Positions 856 to 64,000 of a stretch of 64,000 nt of DNA are shown here, piece after piece. The position numbers and the translations under genes are program-made. Location: NCBI GenBank assembly GCA_965240325.2, contig OZ251246.1:124001-188000 (forward strand), written 5' to 3'. Under the pieces are notes generated by a model. It saw only the letters and a list, made by a program, of their open reading frames with translations, was not told the DNA's origin and searched no databases. The stretch comes from Rebecca billardiae RCC1528. Taxonomy: Eukaryota; Protista; Haptophyta. Numbering within the stretch: the stretch's first letter is position 1; the number at the start of each line of letters is the position of its first letter.

Positions 856-901
<46 letters not shown>

Positions 902-3765: not shown

Positions 3766-3800
<35 letters not shown>

Positions 3801-4587: not shown

Positions 4588-4652
<65 letters not shown>

Positions 4653-12874: not shown

Positions 12875-12974
12875 CGCTTGCGCCGCTCGCGCCGCTTGCG
12901 CCGCCCCCGCCGCGCTCCCTCCCCGCCTCGGCCCCGGCCCGGCGCGCTGCTGCGGCAGCAGCAGCGCGGCGCGC

Positions 12975-14275: not shown

Positions 14276-14446
14276 CGCTTGCGGCGGCGCGCGTGGATCG
14301 ACGCCCGCGATGGATGCCGCACCCGCAGCCGAAAGCCTTGAGGAGCAGTCGGGACTCGGGACTCGGGAGCGTCTCTCCCGGACTTCCTCGCACCGTCTTG
14401 CACGCGGTGACAGCCTCAGTGGTCCTGACGACGACGAACCGTGAGA

Positions 14447-16690: not shown

Positions 16691-16740
<50 letters not shown>

Positions 16741-19171: not shown

Positions 19172-19855
19172 ATATCATAATGACGACGACGACGGCGCGC
19201 GATGATATTATATATATATTATAGATGACGATGACGATATAATTATTATATAATATATATATAGATCGAGCCAGAGAGAGAGTCTCAGACTCCGAGACAG
19301 AGCCGCGAGATGAGTGAGAGAGAGCAGACGCCGGCGCCGGCGGGGGCGCCCCGCAGCCGCGACGACGCCATCCGATCGATATGACTCGGATCGAGTCGCG
19401 CGAATTATATCTCGGCGATAGATAGATCGCGATATATATATATATCAATTATCTAATAATAATCATCCTCGAATGCTGGCAGGCGGCAGCACGATGCGGG
19501 CCGGTGCCCATGGCCATTATATATATATATATATCGTCGTCGCGATCGGACTACGAAGTATGGCGCGGAAGTATCGGCGCTACTCGGCGACCCGGGACTC
19601 GTGCGCGACCAGCAGCACGGGCGCAGCATGCAGTACCCGCTCGGCGCGAGTGAACGACGCTTTGCTGCGGCACGGCGCGATCCGTCCACGCGCGGGCCGT
19701 CCAGCGTCCACGCGGGCGGTGCCACCAATCACTGAATCACACCGATGCCCGCACGCGCACGCGCCGCTCGGTCCGCGCCGCGCGTGCCCGGGCGGTGTGG
19801 TGCACATGCGCTGCGCGGCACCGGTCGGCGGCTGCGGGTGCCGAGGCGCGGCCGC

Positions 19856-20737: not shown

Positions 20738-20965
20738 GACTGTCGACGGGGTGGGCGCGAGCAAATTGAAAATGTGATGCTGAAAAAGGAAGTCCGGCCG
20801 CTCATCATAGAATGAGTACTCATCTTCGTCGGACGTTTCATTATCGCCGGCCTAATCACTAATGAGCGACCGCGCTGCTAGACGTACTCAACTCGCCGGA
20901 TCTCGTCGTCCATCCAAGCCGGCGATGAATCTGCGCCCCCGGCTTGAGGCTGCGCAATTCCCGCG

Positions 20966-23611: not shown

Positions 23612-23800
23612 CTACTCGGGCTCGATGCGCGGCGTGCGGTGCAGCAGGAGCGGCAGCCCGAGCAGCGAGACGACGAGCGGCTCGAGCACGGCCAGCAGGC
23701 ACAGCAGGCTCAGCAGCCTGCGCGTGGCGGCGGCGAGTGCGCGCGCGGCGCTGGGCGGTCAGCGCGGCCGCGCGCGCGCGCGCGCGCGGCCGCTCGGCGC

Positions 23801-23839
<39 letters not shown>

Positions 23840-28455: not shown

Positions 28456-28492
<37 letters not shown>

Positions 28493-30911: not shown

Positions 30912-30942
<31 letters not shown>

Positions 30943-36900: not shown

Positions 36901-37990
36901 TCGAGGCCTGCACGGTGAGCTGCGCGTCGGCCTGCGCGCCGCCGCGCTCGTCGTCCAGCTGCGCGGCCACGTTGGTCACGAACGGGTTGCCGCCGCGGTT
37001 GATCAGGTCGTTCACGAACACGGACAGCACCGCCGGCTGCGAGCCGGTCGGCGCGGCGCCGAGCACGCTGAAGGTGACGCTCAGCAGCTCCACGTCCGTG
37101 CCCGTCACGTCGGCGTCGTCCGTCGAGGCGGGCACGCCCGAGACGAGGATGCCGAGCTCGCCCGTCGCGTCCGGGTCCTCCGGGCTCACCGTCGGCGTGT
37201 TGTACGCCGACGCCACCGCCGTCGAGCCGTACGAGAGCACGGCCGGGTCGTAGCTGAACGTGAGGCGGAACGAGGTGCACGGGAAGCCGCCCGTGTGCGC
37301 GTACGCCGTCGCGACGATCGTGTCGGAGTGGAAGCGGGGCGAGTGGGCGAAGTCGACGCGCACGCCGGCGGCGGAGAGCGGCGTGTGCGTCGGGCTCTGC
37401 GCGAGCGCGATCGCCGAGCTCAGCGCCGCGCCCACCGAGCCGCCGCCCGACGGCGTCGCCGTGACGCTCACGTGCAGCGCGCGCGCCTCCGACTGGGAGA
37501 ACCACGAGGGCGCGACGCTGTGCGAGCACTCGGCGAGGCCGCTCGTCTGGTCGGCCGCGGCGCACGAGACGGTGGTCGAGTCGCCCGCCGTGCTCTGCAG
37601 CGTGAGGCTCACGCCCAGCCCCGACAGCTGCACGTTCGTCCGCCCCGACTCGTCGCGCAGCTGGTAGGTCACCGCCACGTCCGCGCGGTCGGCGTACACG
37701 ACCGCCGTGCGCACCCACGCGCGCACGCTCGCCGGGTCGCGCCGCTGCACGCGGAAGGCGGAGTTGCCCGAGATGGAGGTGATCAGCGCGTCGGAGCCGC
37801 TGAAGCCGGAGAGCGCGCCGCGCAGCACGCCGCGCTCGTTCGGCGTGTTCCCCGCGAAGAAGCCGAAGCCGCCCGCGTGCTGCGCGCCGCTCGACGACTC
37901 GGTGCCCGGCACGCGCCGGCCGAGGGTGAGCACGGACGAGTACACGAGCGCGTGCGCGCCCTCGACCAGCTGCTCGGCCGTGTACGAGAG

Positions 37991-38025
<35 letters not shown>

Positions 38026-47000: not shown

Positions 47001-50000
47001 GTCTGCCCGAGAGCAGCCGACGCGTCGAAGCCGCTCGTCGCGCCCACACTCAGCGTCGACGGCGGCGAGTCGACGAACGCGATCGAATTGAACGCCACGG
47101 GCCGGAGCGATGCGACAAGGCGCTCCACGTCCGTCGACACCACGATCGTCGACGAGATCGACGGGCTCGAGCCGGATGCGCTGATCGCAGCCGAGCCGAC
47201 GCCCACGCCCGTCACCGTCACCACGCCGGTCGTGCCGGACGTGGAGATGCTCGCGACGCCGGCGTCGCCCGAGGCGAGCGTCGCCTCGCGCGTCACGTCC
47301 ACGTTGCTCACCGTGCTCAGACCCGTGCCGCCAAACGACGCGACGAGGCTGGCCGTCGTCGACTGGAACGCCTGCGTGCCGCACTGGCCGGGCTGCGACG
47401 CGCCCTTGATGGCGAAGAGCGTACCGTACCCGAAGCGGATCTCTGCGGACAGCGGGTGCCACACGCGCAGCGGCACGCTCGCGACCACCGCGCCGCTCGA
47501 GACGCGCGTCACGTTCACGAGAGTCGTCGCGGCGCCCGACGTGCTCGAGCTGCTCGCCACCACCGTGCACGGCGACCCTGAGCTGATGCCGAGCACGCTC
47601 GAGTCGAGCGCGAGGCACGAGTAGCCGCTCGACTGAGTGGCAGACGCAGTGGCGGCGCGGCTGTACAGCTCGAGCACGCTGAGCGCGGTGGTCACGTCGG
47701 TGCCGGAGAGCGGCGCGGTGTTGACTAGCTCGCCCGAGGCGACGTATGCGAGCCAGCCCTGCACCGCCACGGTCTCGACCACGAGCGTGCCGCTCGCTGA
47801 CGCGCCGTCGTCCGCGTCGGCAACCACGCCCGCCTGCTCGCTCACGTACACCTGCGTCGCGTCGTTCACGTACTGCTCGATCTCGACCGAGATGGCGCCG
47901 GCGTAGCTGCCAGCGGAGGCACCACCGGCCACGCTCATCGTCAGCGTGATCAGCTCCACGGCCGTACCGGTCACCTGCGCGTTGGTCGTGCCACCGGTGA
48001 GCCCCGTCGCGATGATCGACACGAGGCCGGCCGCGTTGTCGTTCACCTCCGGTGAGTTGTACGTGCTCGCGACCGACGTGCTGGCGACGCTGAGCACGCT
48101 CGAGTTGTACGCAATGTTGATCTGCCAGGTGATCAGCGCGACGCCACCCGTGTGCGCGTACAACACCAGCTCGAAGCTGTCGCCCGCGAACACGGGCGAC
48201 TGCGCCATCTGGCCCAGCAGGCCGACCGATGGGAGTGTGTACGCGGTCGGGCTCTCGGCGAGCGTGATCGCGCCCGCACGAGAGCACGAGTCGACTGTGC
48301 CGCCGCCGTAGTTGAAGTCGACGAGCACGTCGACGCTGCCCGCTGCGGCCGTGCTGAACCAGCCCGAGCTCACGGTGGCCGAGCACTCGCCCACGCCCGT
48401 CGTCGCGCTCGGCGAGCCGCACGAGAAGCTCTGGTCGGAGCCGCCCACCAGCGACAGCGTCAGGCTCACGCTCAGACCCGTGGTGAGCACGGACGAGCGG
48501 TGCGCCGCATCGCGAAGCTGGTACGCGACGCGCACGCCCGCGCGGTCCGCGTACGCCGTCGGCGTGCGCACCGCGCAGTCCACGCTCGCCGCCTGCTCGG
48601 CGGTCACGCTGTAGCTGCTCGCCACGCCGAGATCGATGCCGTGCGACGCGGCGCGCACCGTGCCGGACGCGCCCACAGACGCGCCCGCCAAGAAGCCCAC
48701 CGTCAAGTTGTGCCGGTTGCCGGCGCTGCTGACCGTGCCGTGCACAGCCGCGCCCGGGCTGCTGCTCGTCGTGTACAGCGTGATCTGCGCGTCTGAGACC
48801 AGCGCGTCCGCGCCGAACACGAACGGCGGAAGCGGCGGCGACGGCGGCGACGGCGGCGGGAATGGCAGCGTGCGCGGCGGTGGCGGGCTTGGTGGCGCCG
48901 GCGGCGGGAACGGCGGCGGCGGGCTAGGCGGCGGCGCAGGTGGTGGGCTAGGCGGCGGCGTCGGCGGCGGATGCGGCTGTGGCGGAGGCGGGGACGGCGG
49001 CGGCGAGGGCGGCGGGGACGGCGGAGGGCTCGGTGGCGGTTTTGGCCCGGGCACTGGTGGTGGCGGGCTCGGCGGCGGACTGGGAGGTGGGCTCGGTGGC
49101 GGGAAGGGCGGAGGTTGGGGGAATGGCGGCGGCGGCGAAGGCGGCGGCACAGGCGGCGGGCTGGGAGGCGCTTGCGGCGGGGGGCTAGGTGGCGGGCTGG
49201 GCGGCGGGCTGGGCGGCTGTGAAGGAGGCGGGGGCGACGGAGGCGGCAATGGCGGGGAATGTGGGGGCGGGCTCGGTGGCGGCCCCGGTGGCGGGGATGG
49301 CGGCGGCAACGGCACCGCGACGGGCGGCGGCGGGCTGGGCGGCGGGATTGGTGGCAGCACTGGAGGCGGCGACGGCGGCGGCGCGGGTGGTGGCGCAGGA
49401 GGCGCCGAGGGTGGCGGCAGAGGCGGGGGCGACGGTGGTGGAAGAGGAGTGGCAGCCGGCGGTGGGCTCGGGGGCGGCGTCGGTGGTAGCAATGGCGGTG
49501 GGGACGGCGGTGGCGACGGCGGCGGAGATGGCGGAGGCAAGGGCGGAGGGAGCGGCGGGGGTGAAGGCGGCAGTGACGGGGGCGGCAGCGGGGGCGGTGA
49601 TGGCGGCGGCGACGGCGGTGACGGCGGCGGAAATGGCTCCGAGCGAGGCGGTGGCGGCGGCTGTGGCGGTGGACTCGGCGGTGGGGAGGGCGGCGGGCTT
49701 GGCGGCGGAGACGGTGGCGGTGACGGAGGCGGCGGACTTGGTGGCGGACTTGGCGGCGGGCTCGGTGGCGGGCTAGGGGGAGGGGATGGCGGTGGCGACG
49801 GTGGTGGCACAGGCAGAGCAGCAGGCGGAGGCGGGCTCGGTGGCGGGCTCGGCGGCGGGCTCGGGGGCGCGCTCGGCGGTGGCGACGGTGGCGGTGCCGG
49901 AGGCGTCGCAGGCGGAGGGGACGGTGGCGGTGCTGGCGGCGGCGATGGCGGCGGCCGCGGCGTCACCACCGGTGGTGGCGGGCTTGGCGGCGGCGACGGT

Positions 50001-53000
50001 GGCGGCGACGGAGGGGCGGCCGGCGGAGGCGAAGGCGGCGGGGACGGCGGCGGCGACGGCGGAGGCACGGGTGGCGGAGGCGAGGGCGGTGGGCTCGGCG
50101 GAGGAGACGGCGGCGGGCTTGGCGGCGGTGCCGGGGGCGACGGTGGCGGGAACGGCTCCGTGCGCGGCGGCGGCGGCAGAGCAGGCGGCGGGCTAGGCGG
50201 CGGAGATGGCGGCGGAGACGGCGGCGGTGACGGAGGCGGCGTCGGAGGCGGAGGGCTCGGCGGCGGACGCGGCGGTGGGCTCGGCGGCGGGCTGGGAGGC
50301 GGCAACGGCGGTGGCGACGGTGGCGGCGCTGGCACAGCAGCCGGCGGTGGCGGGCTCGGTGGCGGGCTGGGCGGCGGGCTGGGCGGTGGCGAAGGTGGCG
50401 GTGCCGGAGGCGCCGCAGGCGGGGGCGACGGAGGCGGTGCCGGCGGCGGCGATGGCGGCGGCCGCGGCGTCACCACCGGTGGTGGCGGGCTTGGCGGCGG
50501 AGACGGTGGCGGTGCCGGAGGGGCGGCCGGCGGAGGCGAAGGCGGCGGGAACGGCGGCGGCGACGGCGGTGGCACGGGCGGCGGAGGCGAAGGCGGTGGG
50601 CTCGGTGGAGGAGACGGTGGCGGGCTTGGCGGCGGTGCCGGAGGTGACGGTGGCGGGAACGGCTCCGTGCGCGGCGGCGGTGGCGGCGCAGGCGGCGGGC
50701 TCGGTGGCGGAGACGGAGGCGGGCTCGGTGGCGGAGACGGCGGCGGAGTCGGAGGCGGAGGGCTCGGCGGCGGACGCGGCGGTGGGCTCGGCGGAGGGCT
50801 GGGCGGCGGCAAAGGTGGTGGCGACGGTGGTGGCGCAGGCACAGCAGCCGGCGGTGGCGGGCTCGGTGGCGGGCTGGGTGGCGGGCTGGGCGGCGCACTC
50901 GGCGGTGGTGACGGTGGCGGCAAGGGCGGTGCCCCAGGTGGCGGCGAAGGTGGAGGCGCCGGCGAAGGCGAAGGAGGCGGCAACGGCGTCTCCAGCGGTG
51001 GCGGCGGGCTCGGCGGTGGGGACGGCGGCGGGGAAGGCGGCGGCGAGGGCGGCGGTGACGGCGGCAGACTCGGCGGTGGCGAAGGCGGCGGCACGGGAGG
51101 CGGAGGCGACGGCGGCGGAGACGGCGGCGGCGATGGTGGCGGGCTTGGCGGCGGTGCCGGCGGCGACGGCGGCGGGAACGGCTCCGTGCGCGGCGGCGGT
51201 GGCGGCGCAGGCGGCGGGCTCGGTGGCGGAGACGGAGGCGGGCTCGGTGGCGGAGACGGCGGCGGAGTCGGAGGCGGAGGGCTCGGCGGCGGACGCGGCG
51301 GTGGGCTCGGCGGCGGGCTGGGAGGCGGCAACGGCGGTGGCGACGGTGGCGGCGCTGGCACAGCAGCCGGCGGTGGCGGGCTCGGTGGCGGGCTGGGCGG
51401 CGGGCTGGGCGGTGGCGAAGGTGGCGGTGCCGGAGGCGCCGCAGGCGGGGGCGACGGGGGCGGTGCCGGCGGCGGCGATGGCGGCGGCCGCGGCGTCACC
51501 ACCGGTGGTGGCGGGCTTGGCGGCGGAGACGGTGGCGGCGACGGAGGGGCGGCCGGCGGAGGCGAAGGCGGCGGGAACGGCGGCGGCGAAGGCGGTGGCA
51601 CGGGCGGCGGAGGCGAGGGCGGTGGGCTCGGCGGAGGAGACGGCGGCGGGATTGGCGGAGGTGCCGGAGGCGACGGTGGCGGGAAGGGCTCCGTGCGCGG
51701 CGGAGGCGGCGGCGCAGGCGGCGGGCTTGGCGGCGGCGACGGTGCCGGAGACGGCGGCGGAGAGGGCGGCGGCGTCGGAGGCGGAGGGCTCGGCGGCGGA
51801 CGCGGCGGCGGGCTTGGCGGTGGAGACGGCGGCGCCGACGGCGGCGGCGACGGCGGCGGTGTAGGCACAGCAGCCGGCGGTGGCGGGCTCGGTGGCGGGC
51901 TGGGAGGCGGGCTCGGTGGCGGTCTGGGCGGCGGTGACGGTGGCGGCGCGGGCGGCACCCCAGGCGGCGGCGAAGGTGGCGGCGACGGCGGAGGCGACGG
52001 AGGCGGCAACGGCGTCTCCAGCGGTGGTGGCGGGCTCGGCGGTGGGGACGGCGGCGGGGAAGGCGGCGGCGAGGGCGGCGGTGACGGCGGCAGACTCGGC
52101 GGTGGCGAAGGTGGCGGCACGGGAGGCGGAGGCGACGGCGGCGGAGACGGCGGCGGCGATGGTGGCGGGCTTGGCGGCGGTGCCGGCGGCGACGGCGGCG
52201 GGAACGGCTCCGTGCGCGGCGGCGGCGGCGGTGCGGGCGGCGGGCTAGGCGGCGGAGATGGCGGCGGAGACGGCGGCGGAGATGGCGGCGGCGTCGGAGG
52301 CGGAGGGCTCGGCGGCGGACGCGGCGGTGGGCTCGGCGGCGGGCTGGGAGGCGGCAACGGCGGTGGCGACGGTGGCGGCGCTGGCACAGCAGCCGGCGGT
52401 GGCGGGCTCGGTGGCGGGCTCGGTGGCGGGCTCGGCGGTGGCGAAGGGGGCGGCGCCGGAGGCGCCGCAGGCGGGGGCGACGGAGGCGGTGCCGGCGGCG
52501 GCGATGGCGGCGGCCGCGGCGTCACCACCGGTGGTGGCGGGCTTGGCGGCGGAGACGGTGGCGGCGACGGAGGGGCGGCCGGCGGAGGCGAAGGCGGCGG
52601 GAACGGCGGAGGCGAAGGCGGTGGCACGGGCGGCGGAGGCGAGGGCGGTGGGCTCGGTGGAGGAGACGGTGGCGGGCTTGGCGGCGGTGCCGGAGGTGAC
52701 GGTGGCGGGAAGGGCTCCGTGCGCGGCGGAGGTGGCGGCGCAGGCGGCGGGCTCGGTGGCGGAGACGGAGGCGGGCTCGGTGGCGGAGACGGCGGCGGAG
52801 TCGGAGGCGGAGGGCTCGGCGGCGGACGCGGCGGTGGGCTCGGCGGAGGGCTGGGCGGCGGCAAAGGTGGTGGCGACGGTGGTGGCGCAGGCACAGCAGC
52901 CGGCGGTGGCGGGCTCGGTGGCGGGCTGGGTGGCGGGCTGGGCGGCGCACTCGGCGGTGGTGACGGTGGCGGCAAGGGCGGTGCCCCAGGTGGCGGCGAA

Positions 53001-56000
53001 GGTGGAGGCGCCGGCGGAGGCGAAGGAGGCGGCAACGGCGTCTCCAGCGGTGGCGGCGGGCTCGGAGGCGGCGAGGGCGGCGGGGATGGCGGCGGCGAGG
53101 GCGGCGCTAACGGCGGCGGGCTCGGCGGTGGCGACGGTGGCGGCACCGGCGGCGGAGGCGACGGCGGCGGAGACGGCGGCGGCGATGGCGGAGGCGACGG
53201 TGGCGGGGCCGGCGGCGACGGTGGCGGGAACGGCTCCGTGCGCGGCGGCGGCGGCGGTGCGGGCGGCGGGCTAGGCGGCGGAGATGGCGGCGGAGACGGC
53301 GGCGGAGACGGCGGCGGCGTCGGAGGCGGAGGGCTCGGCGGCGGACGCGGCGGTGGGCTCGGCGGCGGGCTGGGAGGCGGCAACGGCGGTGGCGACGGTG
53401 GCGGCGCTGGCACAGCAGCCGGCGGTGGCGGGCTCGGTGGCGGGCTGGGCGGCGGGCTGGGCGGTGGCGAAGGTGGCGGTGCCGGAGGCGTCGCAGGCGG
53501 GGGCGACGGAGGCGGTGCCGGCGGCGGCGATGGCGGCGGCCGCGGCGTCACCACCGGTGGTGGCGGGCTTGGCGGCGGAGACGGTGGCGGCGACGGAGGG
53601 GCGGCCGGCGGAGGCGAAGGCGGCGGGAACGGCGGCGGCAAAGGCGGTGGCACGGGCGGCGGCGGCGACGGCGGTGGGCTCGGTGGAGGAGACGGTGGCG
53701 GGCTTGGCGGCGGTGCCGGAGGCGACGGTGGCGGGAAGGGCTCCGTGCGCGGCGGCGGTGGCGGCGCAGGCGGCGGGCTCGGTGGCGGAGACGGAGGCGG
53801 GCTCGGTGGCGGAGACGGCGGCGGAGTCGGAGGCGGAGGGCTCGGCGGCGGACGCGGCGGTGGGCTCGGCGGAGGGCTGGGCGGCGGCAAAGGTGGTGGC
53901 GACGGTGGTGGCGCAGGCACAGCAGCCGGCGGTGGCGGGCTCGGTGGCGGGCTGGGTGGCGGGCTGGGCGGCGCACTCGGCGGTGGTGACGGTGGCGGCA
54001 AGGGCGGTGCCCCAGGTGGCGGCGAAGGTGGAGGCGCCGGCGGAGGCGAAGGAGGCGGCAACGGCGTCTCCAGCGGTGGCGGCGGGCTCGGCGGTGGGGA
54101 CGGCGGCGGGGAAGGCGGCGGCGAGGGCGGCGGTGACGGCGGCAGACTCGGCGGTGGCGAAGGTGGCGGCACCGGCGGCGGAGGCGACGGCGGCGGAGAC
54201 GGCGGCGGCGATGGCGGAGGCGACGGTGGCGGGGCCGGCGGCGACGGTGGCGGGAACGGCTCCGTGCGCGGCGGCGGAGGCGGTGCGGGCGGCGGGCTAG
54301 GCGGCGGAGACGGAGGCGGGCTCGGTGGCGGAGACGGCGGCGGAGTCGGAGGCGGAGGGCTCGGCGGCGGACGCGGCGGTGGGCTCGGCGGAGGGCTGGG
54401 CGGCGGCAAAGGTGGTGGCGACGGCGGCGGTGTAGGCACAGCAGCCGGCGGTGGCGGGCTCGGTGGCGGGCTGGGTGGCGGGCTGGGCGGCGCACTCGGC
54501 GGTGGGGACGGTGGCGGCAATGGCGGTGCCCCAGGTGGCGGCGAAGGTGGAGGCGCCGGCGGAGGCGAAGGAGGCGGCAACGGCGTCTCCAGCGGTGGCG
54601 GCGGGCTCGGCGGTGGGGACGGCGGCGGGGAAGGCGGCGGCGAGGGCGGCGGTGACGGCGGCAGACTCGGCGGTGGCGAAGGTGGCGGCACGGGAGGCGG
54701 AGGCGACGGCGGCGGAGACGGCGGCGGCGATGGTGGCGGGCTTGGCGGCGGTGCCGGCGGCGACGGCGGCGGGAACGGCTCCGTGCGCGGCGGCGGCGGC
54801 GGTGCGGGCGGCGAGCTAGGCGGCGGAGATGGCGGCGGAGACGGCGGCGGAGACGGCGGCAACGTCGGAGGCGGAGGGCTCGGCGGCGGACGCGGCGGTG
54901 GGCTTGGCGGTGGAGACGGCGGCGCCGACGGCGGCGGCGACGGCGGCGGCGTAGGCACAGCAGCCGGCGGCGGCGGGCTCGGTGGCGGGCTGGGAGGCGG
55001 GCTCGGTGGCGGGCTGGGCGGCGGTGACGGTGGCGGCGCGGGCGGCACCCCAGGCGGCGGCGAAGGTGGCGGCGACGGCGGAGGCGACGGAGGCGGCAAC
55101 GGCGTCTCCAGCGGTGGTGGCGGGCTCGGCGGTGGGGACGGCGGCGGGGAAGGCGGCGGCGAGGGCGGCGGTGACGGCGGCAGACTCGGCGGTGGCGAAG
55201 GTGGCGGCACGGGAGGCGGAGGCGACGGCGGCGGAGACGGCGGCGGCGATGGTGGCGGGCTTGGCGGCGGTGCCGGCGGCGACGGCGGCGGGAACGGCTC
55301 CGTGCGCGGCGGCGGCGGCGGTGCGGGCGGCGGGCTAGGCGGCGGAGATGGCGGCGGAGACGGCGGCGGAGACGGCGGCGGCGTCGGAGGCGGAGGGCTC
55401 GGCGGCGGACGCGGCGGTGGGCTCGGCGGCGGGCTGGGAGGCGGCAACGGCGGTGGCGACGGTGGCGGCGCTGGCACAGCAGCCGGCGGTGGCGGGCTCG
55501 GTGGCGGGCTCGGTGGCGCACTCGGCGGTGGCGAAGGTGGCGGTGCCGGAGGCGCCGCAGGCGGGGGCGACGGAGGCGGTGCCGGCGGCGGCGATGGCGG
55601 CGGCCGCGGCGTCGCCACCGGTGGTGGCGGGCTTGGCGGCGGAGACGGTGGCGGCGACGGAGGGGCGGCCGGCGGAGGCGAAGGCGGCGGGATCGGCGGC
55701 GGCGAAGGCGGTGGCACGGGCGGCGGAGGCGAGGGCGGCGGGCTCGGCGGAGGAGACGGCGGCGGGCTTGGCGGCGGTGCCGGCGGCGACGGCGGCGGAA
55801 GCGGATCCGTGCGCGGCGGAGGCGGCGGCGCAGGCGGCGGGCTTGGCGGCGGCGACGGTGCCGGAGACGGCGGCGGAGAGGGCGGCGGCGTCGGAGGCGG
55901 AGGGCTCGGCGGCGGACGCGGCGGCGGGCTTGGCGGCGGTGACGGCGGCGTCGACGGCGGCGGCGACGGCGGCGGCGTAGGCACAGCAGCCGGCGGTGGC

Positions 56001-59000
56001 GGGCTCGGTGGCGGGCTGGGTGGCGGGCTGGGTGGCGGGCTGGGCGGCGGGCTCGGTGGCAGGCTGGGCGGAGGGCTCGGCGGTGGCGACGGTAGCGGCG
56101 CGGGCGGCGCCGCAGGCGGAGGCGACGGCGGAGGCGAAGGCGGCGGCGACGGAGGCGGCAACGGCGTCTCCAGCGGTGGTGGCGGGCTCGGCGGAGGCGA
56201 CGGCGGCGGCGATGGCGGCGGCACAGGCGGCTGCGAGGGCGGCGGCGAAGGCGGTGGCGACGGTGGCGACAACGGCGGCGGTGGCGACGGTGGTGGCGAC
56301 GGCGGCGGCGAAGGCGGCGGGCTAGGTGGCGGCGCCGGCGGCGACGGAGGCGGGAACGGATCCGTGCGCGGCGGCGGCGGCGGCGCAGGTGGCGGGCTCG
56401 GCGGGGGCGAAGGCAGCGGGGACGGTGGCGGAGACGGTGGCGGAGCCGGAGGCGGCGGACTCGGCGGCGGAGACGGCGGCGGAGATGGCGGAGGGCTCGG
56501 CGGAGCCGACGGCGGCGGTGACGGCGGCGGCGCAGGCACAGCGACTGGCGGCGGCGGACTCGGTGGCGGGCTGGGTGGCGGGCTGGGCGGCGCACTCGGC
56601 GGCGGCGACGGTGGCGGCGCGGGCGGTGCCCCAGGCGGCGGCGAAGGCGGCGGTGCTGGTGGCGGTGACGGTGGTGGCAATGGCGTCGCAACCGGTGGCG
56701 GCGGGCTCGGCGGCGGCGATGGAGGCGGCGAGGGCGGTGGCGAGGGCGGTGGCGAAGGCGGGGCGCGTGGCGGCGGAGATGGCGGCGGCACCGGCGGCGG
56801 AGGAGAAGGCGGCGGCGACGGCGGTGGAGATGGCGGTGGGCTTGGCGGCGGCGACGGAGGCGACGGCGGCGGGAACGGCTCTGCACGTGGCGGTGGCGGC
56901 GGCTGCGGAGGCGGGCTAGGCGGCGGCGACGGCGGCGGGCTGGGCGGAGGAGACGGCGGCGGCGCTGGTGGTGGCGGGCTCGGCGGTGGCCGCGGCGGAG
57001 GGCTCGGTGGCACGCTCGGTGGCGGGCTTGGTGGCGGAGACGGCGGCGGGGCCGGTGCAGCCACTGGCGGCGGTGGGCTTGGCGGGGGACTCGGAGGCGG
57101 GCTCGGCGGTATAGACGGAGGCGGCGACGGTGGAGGTGCCGGCGGCGCCGCAGGTGGCGGCGACGGCGGCGGTGCTGGGGGAAGCGACGGTGGGGGCGAC
57201 GGCGGCGGCGCAGGCGAGCCCACCGGTGGCGGCGGGCTCGGCGGTGGCGATGGCGGCTGCGACGGTGGTGGCGAAGGCGGAGGGGCAGGCGGCGGGGACG
57301 GAGGCGGCGTGGGTCCCGGCGGCGGGGACGGTGGCGGGGTGGGCGGTGGGCTGGGCGGCGGAGCCGGGGCAGGGGGAGGCGATGGCGGCGGCGATGGCGG
57401 CGGCAGTGGCGGTGGCTGCGGCGGTGGCGAAGGGGGCGGCAGCGGAGGCAGCGGTGGCGGCGATGGAGGCGGCGATGGCGGTGGGGATGGTGGCGGCGAC
57501 GGCGGTGGCACAGGTGGCGGGGCGGGCGGCGCCGCCGGAGGCGGCGGACTCGGCGGTGGCGCCGGAGGCGGCGGCGACGGTGGCGGTAGCGGTGGCGGTG
57601 GCAGCGGAGGCCCAATCACCACTGTCGAGAGCAGCGGCGTGAACGTGTACAGGAAGTCGGCGTAGAACTGCGCGGAGGAGCCGAGGAACGGGAACTTGCG
57701 GTCGTCCGCGCCGTTGCCCAGCGCGTCCGTCGTCTCGATCATCACAGCAACGCCCAACGACCCGCTGAGCGCCTGCGGCCACCCGCCGCTCGGGTACACG
57801 CCCACGCTGAACACGCCGTTGGCGTACTCGCCGCGCCCCACCCAGTAGCCTTCGGTCGACGTGCCGTTGTCCGTGCCGTTCACGTACACTGGCGTGTATG
57901 ACGCAGTGGCCGCGCCGATCTCGAAGAAGACGCTCGTCTGGCTGTCGTCGGCGACGGTGTTGTCGTCCTTCGTCACGACGACGGACACCACGAGCGGGTC
58001 GCTCGTGCCGACGCCAACGGCCCCCGACGTGATGCTGTAGCTCGTCAGGAAGCGGTACTTGCCCGCGACTGCGCGCAGCAGGTACTGCACATCCTGCGCG
58101 CCCGTGCTGTTGTCCAGCGTCGGGTCGAGCGCGGACGCGCACGTCGTCAGCCCGGACACGCCGATGACGAACTGCGAGAGCACGCGCACGTCGAATGAGG
58201 TCAGGGCGCAGTCACCGTTCACATCGCCGGCGACGCCAGCCGAGCAGCCCGAGCACTCCGCCAGCCGCCGCGCGCGCGCCGCCCGGCTCGACTCGGTCGG
58301 CACAAACAGGGGCGGCACGTACTCAGCGGCCAGCGCGAGCGCGCGCCGCCGGCTGACGGTCGTCGTGAGGCCGCCTGCGCCCGCGAAGATGTCGGCGTTC
58401 TGCACGCGCGTCTCGGTCGCGCCCTGCACGGTCACGAGCTCGACGATGCTTCCCGTCAGCGACGTGCTCGCCGAGGACAGCACGTCGAATGTGACGGAGC
58501 CGATCGAGGCGGCAGTGCCGCTGGTGATCTGCGATGCCGTGTTGCCCACAAACCTGACCTCGTTCAGCGGATCGTTGATCGTGCACTCGGCCCACGAGAG
58601 CGTGCTGCACGACGTCGCGACCAGGACAGCGCTGTCGATGGCCAGCTCGATCTGGAAGTTGACCAGGTACTCCGAGCCGCCACCCGTGTTCACGCGCACG
58701 GGCACCGTCAGCGAGTTGCCAGACTGCTGGAACTGCAGTCCGCTCGCTGAGCCGAGGTCCACGTCGTACGTGCCAGGCTGCAGGTTCGCCGTCACGTCGA
58801 GGGCGTCGGCCACCGCGCCGGCATCGCGCGACGTCGCGGTGATCGAGTTCGCCGCGTCACGGCTGTTGCCGGCGATCGTCACCACGCCGTTCGGGTCGAC
58901 GCCGAGCACGGCCGCGTCGTCGCTCTCAAAGCTGAGCACCTCTGACACGCTCACGTACCCCAGCGACATCAGGTTGGTGTACTGCACGCCGTCCTCGAGC

Positions 59001-62000
59001 GTGACGAGCGCGCTCAGCGTGCTCGACGTGCCGTTGGTGGCCAGCAGCGACGCGCCGGACGTCAAGCCGCCCAGGCCCAGCGTCAGCGCCGTCACCTTCA
59101 CCGCCGTCGCGTCGACGTAGACGGTGGCTGACGCTGTGAGCGTGCCCCACGTCGCGTTGATGAGCGCAACGCCCGCGCCCAGGCCGATGACAGTGCTGCC
59201 CGACGTGGTCGCGACGAGCGTGTTGTTCGACGCCAGCACCACCTCTGCGGCCAGCAGCGTGGGCGAGATCACCGTGCCGTCGCTTAGCGTGGCCGATGGC
59301 GTCGTGGCCGTGCGCTGGAACGTGGTGGACGCGCCGATCAGCCCGAGCGTGTCGTCGTCGAGCGTGATCTCGAATGACGCGCCAGCAGCCGTCACGACCG
59401 GCACCTCGACGAAGCCACTGAGGAGGTACGAGTCGACGAAGACGGTCACGTTGAGCGCAGTGCACGTTGCACCGCTCGCCATCGTCACCTCGTTCACGCC
59501 GTCGAATGTGGCGCACGACGACGGCACCGAGAGCGTGATGTTGGTGCGCGGGTCGGTGGTGAAGTCCACCTGCGACTCGTCTTCAAACGTGACCGTGATC
59601 GTGACGGTGAGCGACGTGGGCAGCGACGTCGGCGGCTCGGCAGCAGGGTCGCCCGGCACGGTCACCTTGGCGGCCGATGTGCTCACGCCCACGCTCACCG
59701 CGTTCGGCAACTCTAGATCCACGCGCGCGCGGCCCGTCGCGAGCACGGCGCTGCACGAATCGATCCAGCTCGCGTCGAGGAGCAGGCCCTCCTGCGACGT
59801 GGCAAACGTTGCCACGGTAGCCGTCCACGGCGACGATGCGTCGCCCGGCGCACCGACGGTGAGACTCGACGTGCGGCTCGTCAGCGTGACCTCAGTCGAC
59901 GGCACGAGCTCGTACGAGCCGTCGCCGAGGTACGCGTACGTGTACACGCTCACCGTCTGCCCTTCGGCCGTGAGCGTCTGCCCGAGAGCAGCCGACGCGT
60001 CGAAGCCGCTCGTCGCGCCCACACTCAGCGTCGACGGCGGCGAGTCGATGAACGCGATCGAGTTGAACGCCACGGGCCGGAGCGATGCGATGAGGCGCTC
60101 CACGTCCGTCGACACCACGATCGTCGACGAGATCGACGGGCTCGAGCCAGATGCGCTGATCGCAGCCGAGCCAACGCCAACGCCCGTCACCATCACCACG
60201 CCGGTCGTGCCGGACGTGGAGATGCTCGCGACGCCGGCGTCGCCCGAGGCGAGCGTCGCGTCGCGCGTCACGTCCACGTTGCTCACCGTGCTCAGACCCG
60301 TGCCGCCAAACGACGCGACGAGGCTGGCCGTCGTCGACTGGAACGCCTGCGTGCCGCACTGGCCGGGCTGCGACGCGCCCTTGATGGCGAAGAGCGTACC
60401 GTACCCGAAGCGGATCTCTGCGGACAGCGGGTGCCACACGCACAGCGGCACGCTCGCGACCACCGCGCCGCTCGAGACGCGCGTCACGTTCACAAGAGTC
60501 GTCGCGGCGCCCGACGTGCTCGAGCTGCTCGCCACCACCGTGCACGGCGACCCTGAGCTGATGCCGAGCACGCTCGAGTCGAGCGCGAGGCACGAGTAGC
60601 CGCTCGACTGAGTGGCAGACGCAGTGGCGGCGCGGCTGTACAGCTCGAGCACGCTGAGCGCGGTGGTCACGTCGGTGCCGGAGAGCGGCGCGGTGTTGAC
60701 CAGCTCGCCCGAGGCGACGTATGCGAGCCAGCCCTGCACCACCACGGTCTCGACCACGAGCGTGCCGCTCGCTGACGCGCCGTCGTCCGCGTCGGCGACC
60801 ACGCCCGCCTGCTCGCTCACGTACACCTGCGTCGCGTCGTTCACGTACTGCTCGATCTCGACCGAGATGGCGCCGGCGTAGCTGCCAGCGGAGGCACCAC
60901 CGGCCACGCTCATCGCCAGCGTGATCAGCTCCACGGCCGTACCGGTCACCTGCGCGTTGGTCGTGCCACCGGTGAGCCCCGTCGCGATGATCGACACGAG
61001 GCCGGCCGCGTTGTCGTTCACCTCCGGTGAGTTGTACGTGCTCGCGACCGACGTGCTGGCGACGCTGAGCACGCTCGAGTTGTACGCAATGTTGATCTGC
61101 CAGGTGATCAGCGCGACGCCACCCGTGTGCGCATACATCACCAGGTCAAAGCTGTCGCCCGCGAACACGGGCGACTGCGCCATCTGGCCCAGCAGGCCGA
61201 CCGATGGGAGTGTGTACGCGGTCGGGCTCTCGGCGAGCGTGATCGCGCCCGCACGAGAGCACGAGTCGACTGTGCCGCCGCCGTAGTTGAAGTCGACGAG
61301 CACGTCGACGCTGCCCGCTGCGGCCGTGCTGAACCAGCCCGAGCTCACGGTGGCCGAGCACTCGCCCACGCCCGTCGTCGCGCTCGGCGAGCCGCACGAG
61401 AAGCTCTGGTCGGAGCCGCCCACCAGCGACAGCGTCAGGCTCACGCTCAGACCCGTGGTGAGCACGGACGAGCGGTGCGCCGCATCGCGAAGCTGGTACG
61501 CGACGCGCACGCCCGTGCGGTCTGCGTACGCCGTCGGCGTGCGCACCGCGCAGTCCACGCTCGCCGCCTGCTCGGCGGTCACGCTGTAGCTGCTCGCCAC
61601 GCCGAGATCGATGCCGTGCGACGCGGCGCGCACCGTGCCGGACGCGCCCACAGACGCCCCCGCCAAGAAGCCCACCGTCAAGTTGTGCCGGTTGCCGGCG
61701 CTGCTGACCGTGCCGTGCACAGCCGCGCCCGGGCTGCTGCTCGTCGTGTACAGCGTGATCTGAGCGTCCGAGACCAGCGCGTCCGCGCCGAACACGAACG
61801 GCGGAAGCGGCGGCGACGGCGGCGACGGCGGCGGGAATGGCAGCGTGCGCGGCGGCGGCGGGCTTGGCGGCGACGGCGGCGGGAACGGCGGCGGCGGGCT
61901 AGGCGGCGGCGATGGCGGTGGGCTCGGCGGCGGCAAGGGCGGCGAGCGCGGCTGCGGGGGCGGCGGAGACGGCGGCGGCGAAGGTGGAGGCGACGGCGGA

Positions 62001-64000
62001 GGGCTCGGTGGCGGTTTTGGCCCGGGCACTGGTGGTGGCGGGCTGGGCGGCGGGCTGGGCGGCGGGCTGGGCGGAGGCGATGGCGGTGGTCGCGGGAGAG
62101 GTGGAGGTGGCGAAGGTGGCGGCTCCGGCGGGGGACTAGGAGGCAACGCGGGTGGAGGGCTGGGCGGTGGTGACGGCGGCGGAGACGGCGGCGGCGTCGG
62201 AGGCGGCGGGCTCGGCGGCGGCGACGGCGGCGGGGACGGCGGCGGGCTCGGCGGTGGAACCGGCGGCGGCGACGGCGGCGGTGTAGGCACAGCAGCCGGC
62301 GGCGGCGGGCTCGGTGGTGGACTGGGAGGCGGGCTCGGAGGCGGGCTGGGCGGCGGCGACGGTGGCGGCGACGGCGGAAGCGCAGGCGGCGGCGAAGGTG
62401 GCGGCGACGGCGGAGGCGACGGAGGCGGCAACGGCGTCTCCAGCGGTGGCGGAGGGCTCGGCGGGGGCGACGGCGGCGGCGATGGCGGCGGCACAGGCGG
62501 CGGCGAGGGCGGCGGGCTCGGCGGAGGCGACGGTGGCGGCAACGGCGGCGGAGGCGATGGCGGCGGCGACGGCGGAGGCGAGGGCGGCGGGCTAGGTGGC
62601 GGCGCCGGAGGTGACGGAGGCGGGAGCGGATCCGTGCGCGGCGGCGGCGGCGGCTGTGGTGGCGGGCTCGGCGGCGGAGATGGCGGTGGGGACGGAGGCG
62701 GGGACGGTGGCGGCGTCGGAGGCGGCGGGCTCGGCGGTGGACGCGGTGGCGGTGAAGGCGGCGGGCTCGGCGGTGGCGACGGCGGCGGCGACGGCGGCGG
62801 TGTGGGCACAGCAGCCGGCGGCGGCGGGCTCGGCGGTGGGCTTGGCGGCGGACTTGGTGGCGGGCTGGGCGGCGGCGACGGTGGCGGCGCGGGCGGCGCC
62901 CCAGGCGTTGGCGAAGGTGGCGGCGACGGCGGAGGCGACGGAGGCGGCAACGGCGTCTCCAGCGGTGGCGGAGGGCTCGGCGGGGGCGACGGCGGCGGCG
63001 ATGGCGGCGGCAAAGGCGGCGGCGAGGGCGGCGGGCTCGGCGGAGGCGACGGTGGCGGCAGTGGCGGCGGCGGCGACGGCGGCGGCGACGGCGGAGGGGA
63101 AGGCGGCGGGCTAGGTGGCGGTGCCGGCGGCGACGGAGGCGGGAACGGATCCGTGCGCGGCGGCGGCGGCGGCTGTGGTGGCGGGCTCGGCGGCGGAGAC
63201 GGCGGCGGGGACGGAGGCGGGGACGGTGGCGGCGCCGGAGGCGGCGGACTCGGCGGTGGACGCGGTGGCGGTGAAGGCGGCGGGCTCGGCGGTGGCGACG
63301 GCGGCGGCGACGGCGGCGGTGTTGGCACAGCAGCCGGCGGCGGCGGGCTCGGCGGTGGGCTTGGCGGCGGGCTTGGTGGCGGGCTGGGCGGCGGCGACGG
63401 TGGCGGCGCGGGCGGCGCCTCAGGCGGCGGCGAAGGTGGCGGCGACGGCGGAGGCGACGGAGGCGGCAACGGCGTCTCCAGCGGTGGCGGAGGGCTCGGC
63501 GGGGGCGAAGGCGGCGGCGATGGCGGCAGCAAAGGCGGCGGCGAGGGCGGCGGGCTCGGCGGCGGAGACGGTGGCGGCACCGGCGGCGGCGGTGACGGCG
63601 GCGGCGACGGCGGAGGCGAAGGCGGCGGCGAAGGCGGCGGCGCCGGCGGCGACGGAGGCGGGAACGGATCCGTGCGAGGCGGCGGCGGCGGCTGTGGTGG
63701 CGGGCTCGGCGGCGGAGATGGCGGCGGGGACGGCGGCGGGGACGGTGGCGGCGTTGGAGGCGGCGGGCTCGGCGGCGGACGCGGTGGCGGTGAAGGCGGC
63801 GGGCTCGGCGGTGGCGACGGCGGCGGCGACGGCGGCGGTGTAGGCACAGCAGCCGGCGGCGGCGGGCTCGGTGGTGGGCTGGGCGGCGGGCTTGGTGGCG
63901 GGCTGGGCGGCGGCGACGGTGGCGGCGCGGGCGGCGCCTCAGGCGGCGGCGAAGGTGGCGGCGACGGCGGAGGCGACGGAGGCGGCAACGGCGTCTCAAG
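23612..64000 (-). CDS. Giant (>13,400 aa) membrane-anchored surface protein: SPPP rods, three TMEM132-like/cohesin/dockerin modules, SdrD-B-like domain, polycystin-1-like 5-TM C-terminus; 5' end beyond the window
   Basis: Uninterrupted 40-kb ORF, open to position 64000. A terminal GT-AG intron at 23846-23718 gives CASW|LLSLLCLLAVLEPLVVSLLGLPLLLHRTPRIEPE-TAG (23614-23612). A second in-frame 105-nt intron at 24427-24323 is likely. Hydrophobic helices at ~28765-28840, ~28250-28305, ~28075-28160, ~23915-23965 and ~23645-23717. Confidence 0.88.
33465..37990 (-). other. Globular module 3 (membrane-proximal, diverged) of the giant protein
   Basis: Same motif order as modules 1 and 2 (YADRADV..YQLRD, ECS..V.PSWF, YAHTGG, VPLRVWYP, DVDLG, LVNFQIE, CTINDP, YGDVSGDCAFTSFD, LDPTLDG, FPFLGSSA) but clearly divergent in sequence. 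Confidence 0.85.
39451..41850. repeat. Five tandem 480-bp coding repeats (160-aa Pro-rich unit)
   Basis: Anchor gctccgtgcgcggcggagg recurs at 39451, 39931, 40411, 40891, 41371 and 41851. Confidence 0.92.
44636..48823 (-). repeat. Globular module 2 of the giant protein (near-identical copy of module 1)
   Basis: Matches 57611-61798 at offset 12,975, with about 22 amino-acid differences counted by eye over ~1,396 aa. Confidence 0.95.
50155..56880. repeat. Higher-order coding array of 507/519-bp units (1,026-bp dimer period)
   Basis: The RTEPF anchor recurs near 50155, 50662, 51181, 51688, 52207, 52714, 53233, 53740, 54259, 54778, 55297 and 55804. Confidence 0.85.
57611..61798 (-). repeat. Globular module 1 of the giant protein
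   Basis: FVFGADALVSDAQ...FTPLLSTVVIGP, duplicated at 44636-48823. Confidence 0.95.

What the first reader, a model, noticed from the sequence alone, without database searches (positions are those of the whole stretch)
59900..61420. Each module contains a TMEM132-like ectodomain, repeated at least three times in a non-animal protein
Seen: an ordered motif series GECSATVSSGWF, a cohesin-like domain, ELVNTAPLSG, SCLALDSSVLGIS..PCTV, PL(R/C)VWHP, TLFAIKG, CGTQAFQSTTASLVASF and VDVT, then Ig-like repeats (S.D.AV..V). From memory of the family, this parallels the animal TMEM132 order (C..EL.LPSSWF, EILNTA.LTG, C.S.DEDVIKVS..CD.V, VWVP, LSQIKGW, C.LQYQ, VDVT). TMEM132 is described as one cohesin plus tandem bacterial-Ig-like domains. 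Inference: this is a deep homologue whose cohesin is still accompanied by a dockerin, which would hint at the ancestral ligand of the TMEM132 cohesin.
Basis: partly seen in the sequence, partly recalled or inferred. Interest (0 to 1): 0.85.

Follow-up and report, generated by a model that had tools for sequence, protein, structure and literature searches.

The report
Algal giant protein with TMEM132-like modules
A giant cell-surface protein of a very GC-rich alga carries at least three copies of the same five-domain block that forms the ectodomain of the animal TMEM132 adhesion proteins, and each copy is joined to a second cohesin and a calcium-type dockerin, so this block is older or more widely spread than the published "holozoan" origin and comes with a candidate binding partner.

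Summary

**The ORF and its modules**
- The motifs lie in one minus-strand ORF, 63988..23759, of more than 13,409 aa. It is open at its 5' end.
- Three modules of about 1,400 aa are separated by Ser-Pro3 rods.
- M1 and M2 are 98.9% identical in DNA. M3 is 41% identical to M1 in protein.

**Evidence for a TMEM132-type cassette**
- Pfam Ig_TMEM132_4th hits M1 above its curated cut-off (E 4e-9).
- Among 66 homologous cassettes, 59 hit the 4th domain, 17 hit Cohesin, 6 hit the 5th domain and 9 hit the 6th, and the hits checked for position lie in that order.
- An AlphaFold model (pLDDT 93.6) has TMEM132A-E as its 13 best Swiss-Prot matches. Their E-values are 1e-33 to 3e-30 over about 640 residues, against 1e-16 or weaker for other multi-Ig proteins.
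- Conserved cysteines sit where the disulphides predicted for TMEM132 would be.

**Rest of each module:** three more Ig domains, a second cohesin (Z 12.9), a basic linker, a dockerin (profile E 3.5e-7) and a β-sandwich.

**Distribution:** the unit recurs in 538 protein clusters, including haptophytes and green algae.

**Limits**
- It is a homologue of the ectodomain cassette, not a TMEM132 orthologue. There is no adjacent membrane helix and no TMEM132_C.
- Whether the dockerin binds the TMEM132-type cohesin is untested.
- First-stage notes from this scan describe similar modules elsewhere in this genome.

The parts
23759..63988 (-). Giant stop-free ORF (13,409 aa inside the window, open at the 5' window end). 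It consists of Ser-Pro3 spacers, three globular modules and a C-terminal non-repeat region with hydrophobic helices.
   Evidence: GC3 periodicity
57629..61879 (-). Module 1 (ORF aa 704-2120), which contains the reported stretch 59900-61420
61223..61576 (-). M1 domain 1: Ig-like 'conserved region' before the cohesin. It carries GxCx7WF and the C63/C75 cysteine pair.
   Evidence: Model residues 3-120. Foldseek aligns from TMEM132D residue 128. Cysteines. No Pfam hit to the TMEM132 N-terminal or 2nd-domain models.
60743..61207 (-). M1 cohesin 1 (TMEM132-type position)
   Evidence: VIA-align Z 14.2, rmsd 2.4 A over 132 residues to solved cohesins. Pfam Cohesin hits 17 of 66 homologues. Profile hits in PDB are cohesins only, at weak E-values.
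60407..60736 (-). M1 BIG1, equivalent to Pfam Ig_TMEM132_4th. It carries ELVNTAPLSG, the C331/C347 pair and VWHP.
   Evidence: Pfam PF16070 E 4.4e-9, 36.6 bits, cut-off 27
60035..60400 (-). M1 BIG2, equivalent to TMEM132 5th domain. It carries CGTQAFQ and VDVT, with C409 in the a-b loop.
59648..60001 (-). M1 BIG3, equivalent to TMEM132 6th domain, with C610 in the f-g loop
58781..59635 (-). M1: three further Ig/Big_2-like domains
   Evidence: Models. LigA/LigB Big_2 and teneurin-like hits.
58349..58774 (-). M1 cohesin 2
   Evidence: VIA-align Z 12.9 to 11.4 to solved cohesins, rmsd 2.5-3.4 A. Profile versus PDB gives cohesins only among the nine best hits, best 7.6e-4. hhalign against cohesin 1 gives probability 97.9%.
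58250..58348 (-). M1 basic linker (RR ... RRRL), disordered in the model
   Evidence: pLDDT below 50 at model B residues 391-407. Conserved RR/RRRL in the A3 consensus.
58058..58249 (-). M1 dockerin with two EF-hand-like loops (DVNGDC...D and DPTLDN...D)
   Evidence: Profile versus PDB: 29 hits, 28 of them named dockerins or dockerin-bearing cellulosomal or amylosomal proteins (one serine-protease sequence, 8x39_A/8x3a_A, is not named as such), best 2ccl_B at 3.5e-7 across both repeats. Pfam Dockerin_1 hits 3 of 25 homologues.
57668..58051 (-). M1 C-terminal beta-sandwich of unassigned family
   Evidence: Model B residues 478-605. No Pfam or PDB assignment.
44654..48904 (-). Module 2, 98.9% identical in DNA to module 1. 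Cassette 46535-48595, cohesin 2 45374-45814, dockerin 45080-45283.
33479..38077 (-). Module 3, 41% identical to module 1. Cassette 35588-37732, cohesin 2 34313-34753, dockerin 33923-34144.
48905..57628 (-). Ser-Pro3 (extensin-like) spacer of 2,908 aa between modules 1 and 2. Similar spacers lie at 61880-63988, 38078-44653 and 30713-33478.
28769..28837 (-). First hydrophobic helix of the C-terminal region, a candidate membrane anchor. Further hydrophobic segments start at ORF aa 11896, 11944 and 13343.
   Evidence: Hydropathy scan. Not tested further.

Best explanation
The stretch encodes the core of module 1 of a giant, probably membrane-anchored, cell-surface glycoprotein of a very GC-rich alga. 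Its closest relatives are in pavlovophyte and prymnesiophyte haptophytes.

Each module of about 1,400 aa begins with a five-domain cassette: an Ig-like conserved region, a cohesin and three tandem Big_2-type Ig domains. This cassette is homologous to the ectodomain of animal TMEM132 proteins and to the same cassette in choanoflagellate and sponge cadherins.

The cassette is followed by three more Ig domains, a second cohesin, a disordered basic linker, a two-loop calcium-type dockerin and an unassigned beta-sandwich. Modules are held apart by very long Ser-Pro3 rods.

Shown here: the homology of the cassette, the cohesin folds, the dockerin and the conserved 1:1:1 linkage of cassette, second cohesin and dockerin.

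Inferred: cohesin-dockerin pairing, within or between molecules, cross-links these proteins into a calcium-dependent pericellular scaffold, with the TMEM132-type cassette acting as the adhesive or ligand-binding head.
For: **Sequence profiles**
- PF16070 scores above its gathering cut-off on M1.
- It hits 59 of 66 family cassettes, best 7e-24. Cohesin hits 17, the 5th domain 6 (best 4e-9) and the 6th domain 9 (best 7e-6).
- In the members checked the hits are collinear, for example P0028 with the 4th domain at 289-383, the 5th at 388-490 and the 6th at 495-597.

**Structure**
- The model has pLDDT 93.6 and pTM 0.78.
- The top 13 Swiss-Prot AFDB hits are all TMEM132, at E 1e-33 to 3e-30.
- The top four AFDB cluster hits match the cassette: three are named TMEM132A or TMEM132D and one carries no name.
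- In the ESM Atlas, a chordate TMEM132C cluster gives TM 0.50, and a TMEM132D cluster gives 334 residues at 3.2 A.
- The generic baseline in PDB is E about 1e-13 with TM 0.24 or less.

**Cysteines**
- C331/C347 lie on adjacent strands of BIG1.
- C409 lies in the a-b loop of BIG2 and C610 in the f-g loop of BIG3.
- This is the topology of the two disulphides predicted for TMEM132 (PMC6030884 text and supplement).

**Cohesins and dockerin**
- The cohesins give Z 14.2 and 12.9 against solved cohesins.
- Cohesin 1 versus cohesin 2 by hhalign gives 97.9% probability.
- The dockerin profile hits dockerins, best 3.5e-7.

**Family**
- 538 clusters match at E 1e-3 or better, and 104 at 1e-30 or better.
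- Of 74 homologues longer than 1,300 aa, 61 carry cassette plus dockerin, almost always 1:1:1.
- Named members come from Prymnesium, Diacronema, Pavlovales sp., Cymbomonas, Mesostigma and Pedinophyceae sp..
Against: - Only the 4th-domain model passes its curated cut-off on the window's own sequence. The 5th, 6th and cohesin assignments for M1 rest on relatives and on the predicted structure.
- No Pfam hit was found to TMEM132_N, Ig_TMEM132_2nd, TMEM132_3rd or TMEM132_C.
- TM-scores stay just under 0.5 for the whole cassette.
- No animal sequence was available for a direct profile-profile alignment or a tree.
- No RNA run was listed, so expression, gene limits and the single-gene status of the 40-kb ORF are not shown.
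- The scaffold or adhesion mechanism is inference only.
Confidence: 0.88

Rival explanations
1. The resemblance is convergent. A cohesin followed by Big_2 domains was assembled independently in algae from widespread bacterial-type domains, so the cassette is not specifically related to TMEM132.
For: Cohesin and Big_2 domains are common and mobile. Pfam Cohesin, not TMEM132_3rd, is what hits the algal cohesin. There is no hit to the TMEM132 N-terminal, 2nd or C-terminal models. Whole-cassette TM is 0.47-0.50.
Against: The TMEM132-specific 4th, 5th and 6th domain models hit, not the general Big_2 model, which hits only 2 of 66. There is a 17-order E-value gap between TMEM132 and every other multi-Ig protein. 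The three Ig domains superpose as a rigid unit at 3.2 A over 334 residues. The cysteine topology is the same.
Confidence: 0.05
2. The cassette is truly homologous but is shared through lateral transfer, between algae and the holozoan stem or from one bacterial donor into both. It would then not be a 'deep' vertical homologue.
For: The distribution among named genomes is patchy: haptophytes, prasinophyte, pedinophyte and streptophyte algae, and holozoans (PMC6030884). All component domains are typical of bacteria. Identity to TMEM132 is only 14-18%.
Against: No bacterial protein with the same five-domain arrangement appeared in AFDB clusters, PDB or the ESM Atlas; bacterial hits have TM 0.30 or less. 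The family is large and diverse within algae. No tree was built, so this rival is open. It changes the history, not the identity of the cassette.
Confidence: 0.3
3. The dockerin pairs only with the adjacent second cohesin, as an intramolecular clasp or as a non-covalent joint after cleavage at the basic linker. It therefore says nothing about the ligand of the TMEM132-type cohesin.
For: The dockerin lies about 30 residues after cohesin 2 and about 830 residues after cohesin 1. The linker is disordered and basic. Cohesin 2 and dockerin are 1:1 in almost all homologues. pTM 0.75 for a six-domain model hints at fixed packing, but contacts could not be inspected.
Against: Distances between modules co-vary with the dockerin about equally for cohesin 1 (partial r 0.39) and cohesin 2 (0.36) after controlling for the Ig domains. 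This is a weak, non-independent test. There are two cohesins per dockerin, so one cohesin is always left free.
Confidence: 0.45
4. The 40-kb ORF is an artefact of very GC-rich, stop-poor DNA or of repeat assembly. The three modules would belong to separate genes or to collapsed or expanded repeats.
For: GC is 70-88% and long ORFs appear in several frames, for example an antisense 3,009-aa Gly-rich ORF. M1 and M2 are 98.9% identical. Only four 151-base contigs of one public run matched. No RNA run was listed.
Against: GC3 periodicity is strong. Both models are confident over 701 and 618 contiguous residues. Multi-module relatives of 4,700-7,800 aa occur in Prymnesium, Cymbomonas and metagenomes. 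The modules themselves are real whichever way the gene limits fall.
Confidence: 0.1

Closest known systems
Animal TMEM132A-E (Pfam PF16070, PF23486, PF23487, PF23039; Sanchez-Pulido & Ponting, PMC6030884)
   Same: Same ordered cassette: conserved region, cohesin and three Big-type Ig domains. The best structural match covers about 640 residues. The cysteine topology is the same, and the 4th-domain model scores above its cut-off.
   Different: The cassette is repeated at least three times in one chain. It is followed by three more Ig domains, a second cohesin and a dockerin instead of a membrane helix. There is no TMEM132_C tail, with its PP1 and WIRS motifs, after the cassette. The host is an alga. 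The cohesin is closer to the canonical Cohesin model than to TMEM132_3rd.
Choanoflagellate and sponge lefftyrin, coherin and hedgling cadherins (PMC6030884)
   Same: They are large multidomain surface proteins outside the TMEM132 gene family that embed the same five-domain cassette.
   Different: Those proteins combine it with cadherin repeats. Here it is combined with Ser-Pro3 rods, an extra cohesin and a dockerin. No sequence of these proteins was available here for comparison.
Bacterial cellulosome scaffoldins and anchoring proteins (type I/II cohesin-dockerin)
   Same: Cohesin folds match at Z 12-14. The dockerin has two EF-hand-like loops and aligns over both repeats. Cohesins and a dockerin sit on one chain, as in adaptor scaffoldins.
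   Different: The protein is eukaryotic, with no enzymes or carbohydrate-binding modules detected. The dockerin has a conserved set of cysteines (C..C...GDxNGDC...LC). The modules are spaced by hydroxyproline-type rods.
Extensin-like hydroxyproline-rich glycoproteins of green algae (for example the Chlamydomonas mastigoneme protein, PDB 8wa2)
   Same: Globular Ig-type heads alternate with long Ser-Pro-rich polyproline rods. The mastigoneme chains appear among the generic structural hits.
   Different: There is no specific relation: TM is 0.22 or less. The globular parts here are TMEM132-type cassettes plus cohesin-dockerin.

Membership tests
TMEM132 family (ectodomain cassette) | Three tandem Big-type Ig domains matching Pfam Ig_TMEM132_4th, 5th and 6th | tested here: met
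   The 4th domain scores 36.6 bits on M1 against a cut-off of 27. The 5th and 6th are sub-threshold on M3 and M1 but hit 6 and 9 of 66 homologues, best 4e-9 and 7e-6, and are collinear in the members checked. Structural superposition gives 334 residues at 3.2 A.
TMEM132 family (ectodomain cassette) | Cohesin-like domain directly before the three Ig domains | tested here: met
   Model residues 126-280 match solved cohesins at Z 14.2. Pfam Cohesin hits 17 of 66 homologues and M3 at E 8e-4. The TMEM132_3rd model itself did not hit.
TMEM132 family (ectodomain cassette) | Conserved region (Ig-like) before the cohesin | tested here: inconclusive
   Foldseek alignments start at TMEM132D residue 128, inside the published conserved region. 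There is no Pfam hit to Ig_TMEM132_2nd or TMEM132_N.
TMEM132 family (ectodomain cassette) | One disulphide inside BIG1 and one between BIG2 (a-b loop) and BIG3 (f-g loop) | tested here: inconclusive
   Cysteines conserved in 62-66 of 66 sequences sit at exactly these topological places. Distances in the model could not be read and no animal sequence was aligned.
TMEM132 family (whole protein, orthology) | Single cassette followed by one membrane helix and the TMEM132_C tail with PP1 (RVxF) and WIRS motifs | tested here: not met
   There is no PF15706 hit on the modules or on the C-terminal 2,317 aa. The cassette is followed by Ig domains, cohesin and dockerin, and hydrophobic helices lie thousands of residues away.
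Cohesin (PF00963), second copy | Nine-strand jelly-roll cohesin fold with sequence similarity to cohesins | tested here: met
   Z 12.9 to 11.4 against many solved cohesins. The nine best profile hits in PDB are all cohesins, best 7.6e-4. Pfam Cohesin hits 3 of 25 homologues, best 4e-7; the position of those hits within the members was not inspected.
Dockerin type I (PF00404) | Two EF-hand-like calcium loops (D-x-N/T-x-D ... D), each followed by a helix | tested here: met
   The family profile hits 29 PDB sequences, 28 of them named dockerins or dockerin-bearing proteins, best 3.5e-7, aligned over both repeats. Pfam Dockerin_1 hits 3 of 25 homologues. The window sequence alone gives only E 0.71.
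Dockerin type I (PF00404) | Calcium-dependent binding to a cohesin | not testable with these tools
   This needs binding assays or complex prediction. The co-variation test was uninformative.

The most novel reading that the evidence does not exclude
The dockerin in each module is the cognate, calcium-dependent ligand of the TMEM132-type cohesin, not only of the neighbouring second cohesin. On this reading these algal giants self-assemble into a cohesin-dockerin lattice. The animal TMEM132 cohesin would descend from a dockerin-binding domain and may still recognise an EF-hand-like dockerin remnant in an unidentified partner.
Probability: 0.2. Interest if true: 0.85.

Novelty: new variant of a known kind. 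Interest (0 to 1): 0.68.

Why it matters
[quoted passage not shown] The only domain study places the origin of the architecture in early holozoans and notes that no dockerin partner is detectable in vertebrates (PMC6030884).

Here the same cassette appears as a large, diverse family in haptophytes and green algae. It is almost always tied 1:1 to a second cohesin and a bona fide dockerin. This has two consequences:
- It pushes the cassette's origin back, or reveals a lateral transfer.
- It supplies natural, expressible cohesin and dockerin pairs with which to test what a TMEM132-type cohesin binds.

It also documents a cellulosome-style cohesin-dockerin system in eukaryotic cell-surface proteins. 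I found no paper describing this. Automatic UniRef names already flag the 4th domain in Prymnesium and Cymbomonas proteins.

Tried and rejected
1. **Word-indexed protein searches.** These were nearly blind here. They gave 1 hit for the module and 4 for the profile, against 538 clusters in the exhaustive search.
2. **PDB by sequence and by Foldseek.** No TMEM132 match was found in PDB by these searches. The hits are generic multi-Ig proteins, which I used as a baseline.
3. **Whole-model PDB and Atlas searches for the second half.** These returned only generic Ig arrays. VIA-align was needed to see the cohesin.
4. **Co-variation ('mirror-tree') test.** I compared the dockerin with cohesin 1 and with cohesin 2 over 48 non-redundant modules. 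Partial r was 0.39 against 0.36, which does not discriminate.
5. **Expression and independent reads.** No RNA run was listed (one search failed as busy). One run holds only four 151-base contigs with 1-2 mismatches each.
6. **Naming the organism from a neighbouring SDR gene.** The window's own protein is masked, and the nearest relatives are unnamed assemblies at 76% identity or less.
Full report
**What is there**

The window is extremely GC-rich, 61-88% in 2-kb bins. The reported stretch lies inside a single stop-free reading frame on the minus strand, 63988..23759, of 13,409 codons. The frame continues to the last base of the window, where the upstream codons read L-E-T-P as in the repeat units, so the protein starts outside the window.

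A proline-content scan divides the ORF into these parts:
- four Ser-Pro3 spacers of 703, 2,908, 2,192 and 922 aa;
- three globular modules: M1 (aa 704-2120, nt 61879-57629), M2 (nt 48904-44654) and M3 (nt 38077-33479);
- a C-terminal non-repeat region with four hydrophobic segments.

M1 and M2 differ at 47 of 4,248 bases, with 24 synonymous and 23 non-synonymous codon changes and no indels. M3 is 41% identical to M1 in protein. Third-position GC of 0.92 and 0.99, against 0.57-0.69 at the other positions, supports the frame.

**Is it TMEM132-like?**

Sequence profiles:
- Pfam places Ig_TMEM132_4th on M1 residues 387-484 at E 4.4e-9 and 36.6 bits, above the curated cut-off of 27.
- M3 gives sub-threshold hits to the 4th domain, to Cohesin and to the 6th domain.

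The family:
- An exhaustive HMMER search with M1 residues 100-800 found 538 clusters at E 1e-3 or better, 334 at 1e-10 or better and 104 at 1e-30 or better. Most align end to end over about 690 residues.
- I aligned 66 of these cassettes and scanned each against Pfam. Fifty-nine hit the 4th domain (best 7e-24), 17 hit Cohesin (1.3e-7), 6 hit the 5th domain (4e-9) and 9 hit the 6th (7e-6). Only 2 hit the general Big_2 model.
- In the ten members whose hit positions were inspected, the hits are collinear. For example, one member has the 4th domain at 289-383, the 5th at 388-490 and the 6th at 495-597.

Predicted structure:
- An AlphaFold2 model built on this alignment is confident, with mean pLDDT 93.6 and pTM 0.78.
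- Against the Swiss-Prot part of AlphaFold DB, the 13 best matches are all TMEM132 proteins: human, mouse and rat A-E, zebrafish E and the C. elegans homologue.
- These matches have E 1.4e-33 to 3.4e-30 and TM 0.46-0.47. They align model residues 8-650 with TMEM132 residues about 120-815.
- The next hits (ice-binding protein, CbpA, NUP210, S-layer proteins) fall to E 1e-16 or weaker and TM 0.19 or less.
- AFDB fold clusters agree: three of the four best clusters are named TMEM132A or TMEM132D and the fourth carries no name.
- ESM Atlas models agree too. A chordate TMEM132C cluster gives TM 0.50, and a TMEM132D cluster gives 334 residues at 3.2 A.
- Neither the family profile nor Foldseek found a TMEM132 match among solved structures. 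The PDB hits are generic multi-Ig proteins at E about 1e-13 and TM 0.24 or less, and they serve as a baseline.

Cysteines:
- Six cysteine columns are conserved in 62-66 of 66 cassettes.
- In the model, C331 and C347 lie on adjacent strands of the first Big domain.
- C409 lies in the first loop of the second Big domain, and C610 lies in the loop before the last strand of the third.
- This is the topology of the intradomain and interdomain disulphides predicted for TMEM132 (PMC6030884 and its supplement). I could not measure distances in the model.

**The rest of the module**

The cohesin inside the cassette superposes on solved cohesins at Z up to 14.2, with 2.4 A over 132 residues.

A second model, of M1 residues 800-1417 (pLDDT 85.6, pTM 0.75), shows:
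- three more Ig domains, with Big_2 hits to LigA and LigB;
- a second cohesin, at Z 12.9 to 11.4 against many solved cohesins;
- a linker that is disordered and basic;
- a helical domain, and then a beta-sandwich that I could not assign.

The two cohesins are related to each other, with hhalign probability 97.9% and E 3.7e-13.

A profile of the helical domain from 25 homologues hits 29 PDB sequences, 28 of them named dockerins or dockerin-bearing cellulosomal or amylosomal proteins. The best is 2ccl_B at 3.5e-7, aligned over both calcium loops. The window sequence alone reached only E 0.71.

The algal dockerins carry a conserved set of cysteines around the first loop.

**How general is it?**
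- HMMs of the cassette, the second cohesin and the dockerin, run over all retrieved proteins, give 3:3:3 for the window ORF.
- Of 74 homologues longer than 1,300 aa, 61 have cassette plus dockerin, almost always 1:1:1.
- Named members come from Prymnesium parvum and P. polylepis, Diacronema lutheri, Pavlovales sp. CCMP2436, Cymbomonas tetramitiformis (many paralogues), Mesostigma viride and Pedinophyceae sp. YPF-701.
- One metagenomic single-module member ends in a clear membrane helix. It sits beside violaxanthin de-epoxidase and zeaxanthin epoxidase-like genes, so it comes from an alga.
- The window's own organism could not be named. The best cassette matches are haptophytes, at 34-41% identity.

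**Interpretation**

The cassette is a true homologue of the TMEM132 ectodomain. It is not an orthologue of TMEM132, because there is no adjacent membrane helix, no TMEM132_C tail and no single-cassette layout.

It most resembles the situation already described for choanoflagellate and sponge cadherins that embed the same cassette. Here, however, it occurs outside Holozoa and is tied to a cohesin-dockerin pair.

The most likely function is a calcium-dependent, self-associating cell-surface scaffold on polyproline rods. This is inference from the domain families.

Which cohesin the dockerin binds is open. Its position favours the neighbouring second cohesin. A co-variation test over 48 modules did not discriminate, with partial r 0.39 for cohesin 1 and 0.36 for cohesin 2.

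**Novelty**

The only paper in the library that mentions both TMEM132 and dockerin is the 2017 domain study. It dates the architecture to early holozoans and states that no dockerin is detectable in vertebrates. No paper links TMEM132 with algae, or cohesin-dockerin with haptophytes.

Automatic UniRef names already call some Prymnesium and Cymbomonas proteins 'TMEM132 fourth domain-containing', so the single-domain hit is in databases. The full cassette, its repetition and its fixed link to a dockerin are not described.

First-stage notes from this scan report similar modules at other places in the same genome. I did not test those.

**Limits**
- No animal sequence was aligned directly.
- No tree was built.
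- No transcript evidence was found.
- The limits of the gene are not shown.

Noticed in passing
window 58058-58249 versus 45080-45283 (dockerins of M1 and M2): Of the 23 amino-acid differences between the near-identical modules 1 and 2, five (module residues 1237, 1238, 1239, 1264, 1270) fall in the 64-residue dockerin, where about one would be expected. A sixth (1203) is in the basic linker just before it.
   Followed up: partly
window 58250-58348, and the same place in M2 and M3: A conserved basic linker (RR ... RRRL) lies between the second cohesin and the dockerin and is disordered in the model (pLDDT below 50). R405 and the following cysteine are nearly invariant in 25 homologues. It could be a dibasic processing site.
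   Followed up: no
window 58055-58261 and homologues (alignment A6): The algal dockerins carry conserved cysteines (C..C before the first loop, GDxNGDC in place of the usual GDxNGDG, and a further LC). This suggests a disulphide-stabilised eukaryotic dockerin.
   Followed up: no
window 48636-57665, + strand: A 3,009-aa Gly-rich ORF is simply the antisense of the Ser-Pro3 spacer. Several other long ORFs in this stop-poor DNA look like frame artefacts.
   Followed up: partly
window 23762-30712, - strand: The C-terminal non-repeat region has four hydrophobic segments (ORF aa 11718, 11896, 11944, 13343) and long low-complexity Ala/Gly/Arg stretches. It has no Pfam hit. Where the true stop lies is uncertain.
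   Followed up: no
window about 8026-9500 and 9619-11190: Two tandem copies of a unit of about 1.7 kb: identical or near-identical ORF sets are offset by 1,697 bases. Its nature is unknown.
   Followed up: no
window 12860-22549: Ordinary neighbouring genes. These are a radical-SAM-like ORF (12860-15217, -), a homoserine-kinase-like ORF (15885-17078, +) and an SDR/tropinone-reductase-like gene (19856-20764, -). There is also a class I aldolase-like gene in two ORF pieces (20966-21766 and 22040-22549, +), which suggests an intron. Only the SDR was confirmed by a search; the other three names are readings of the translations by eye.
   Followed up: partly
window 1-6000: Another stretch at 80-86% GC with very long ORFs in several frames. 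It may be part of a further repeat-rich gene.
   Followed up: no
window 57668-58051: The beta-sandwich after the dockerin is conserved in 23 of the 25 aligned homologues (consensus ending ...FPFLGSS) but matches no Pfam family or solved structure in these searches.
   Followed up: partly
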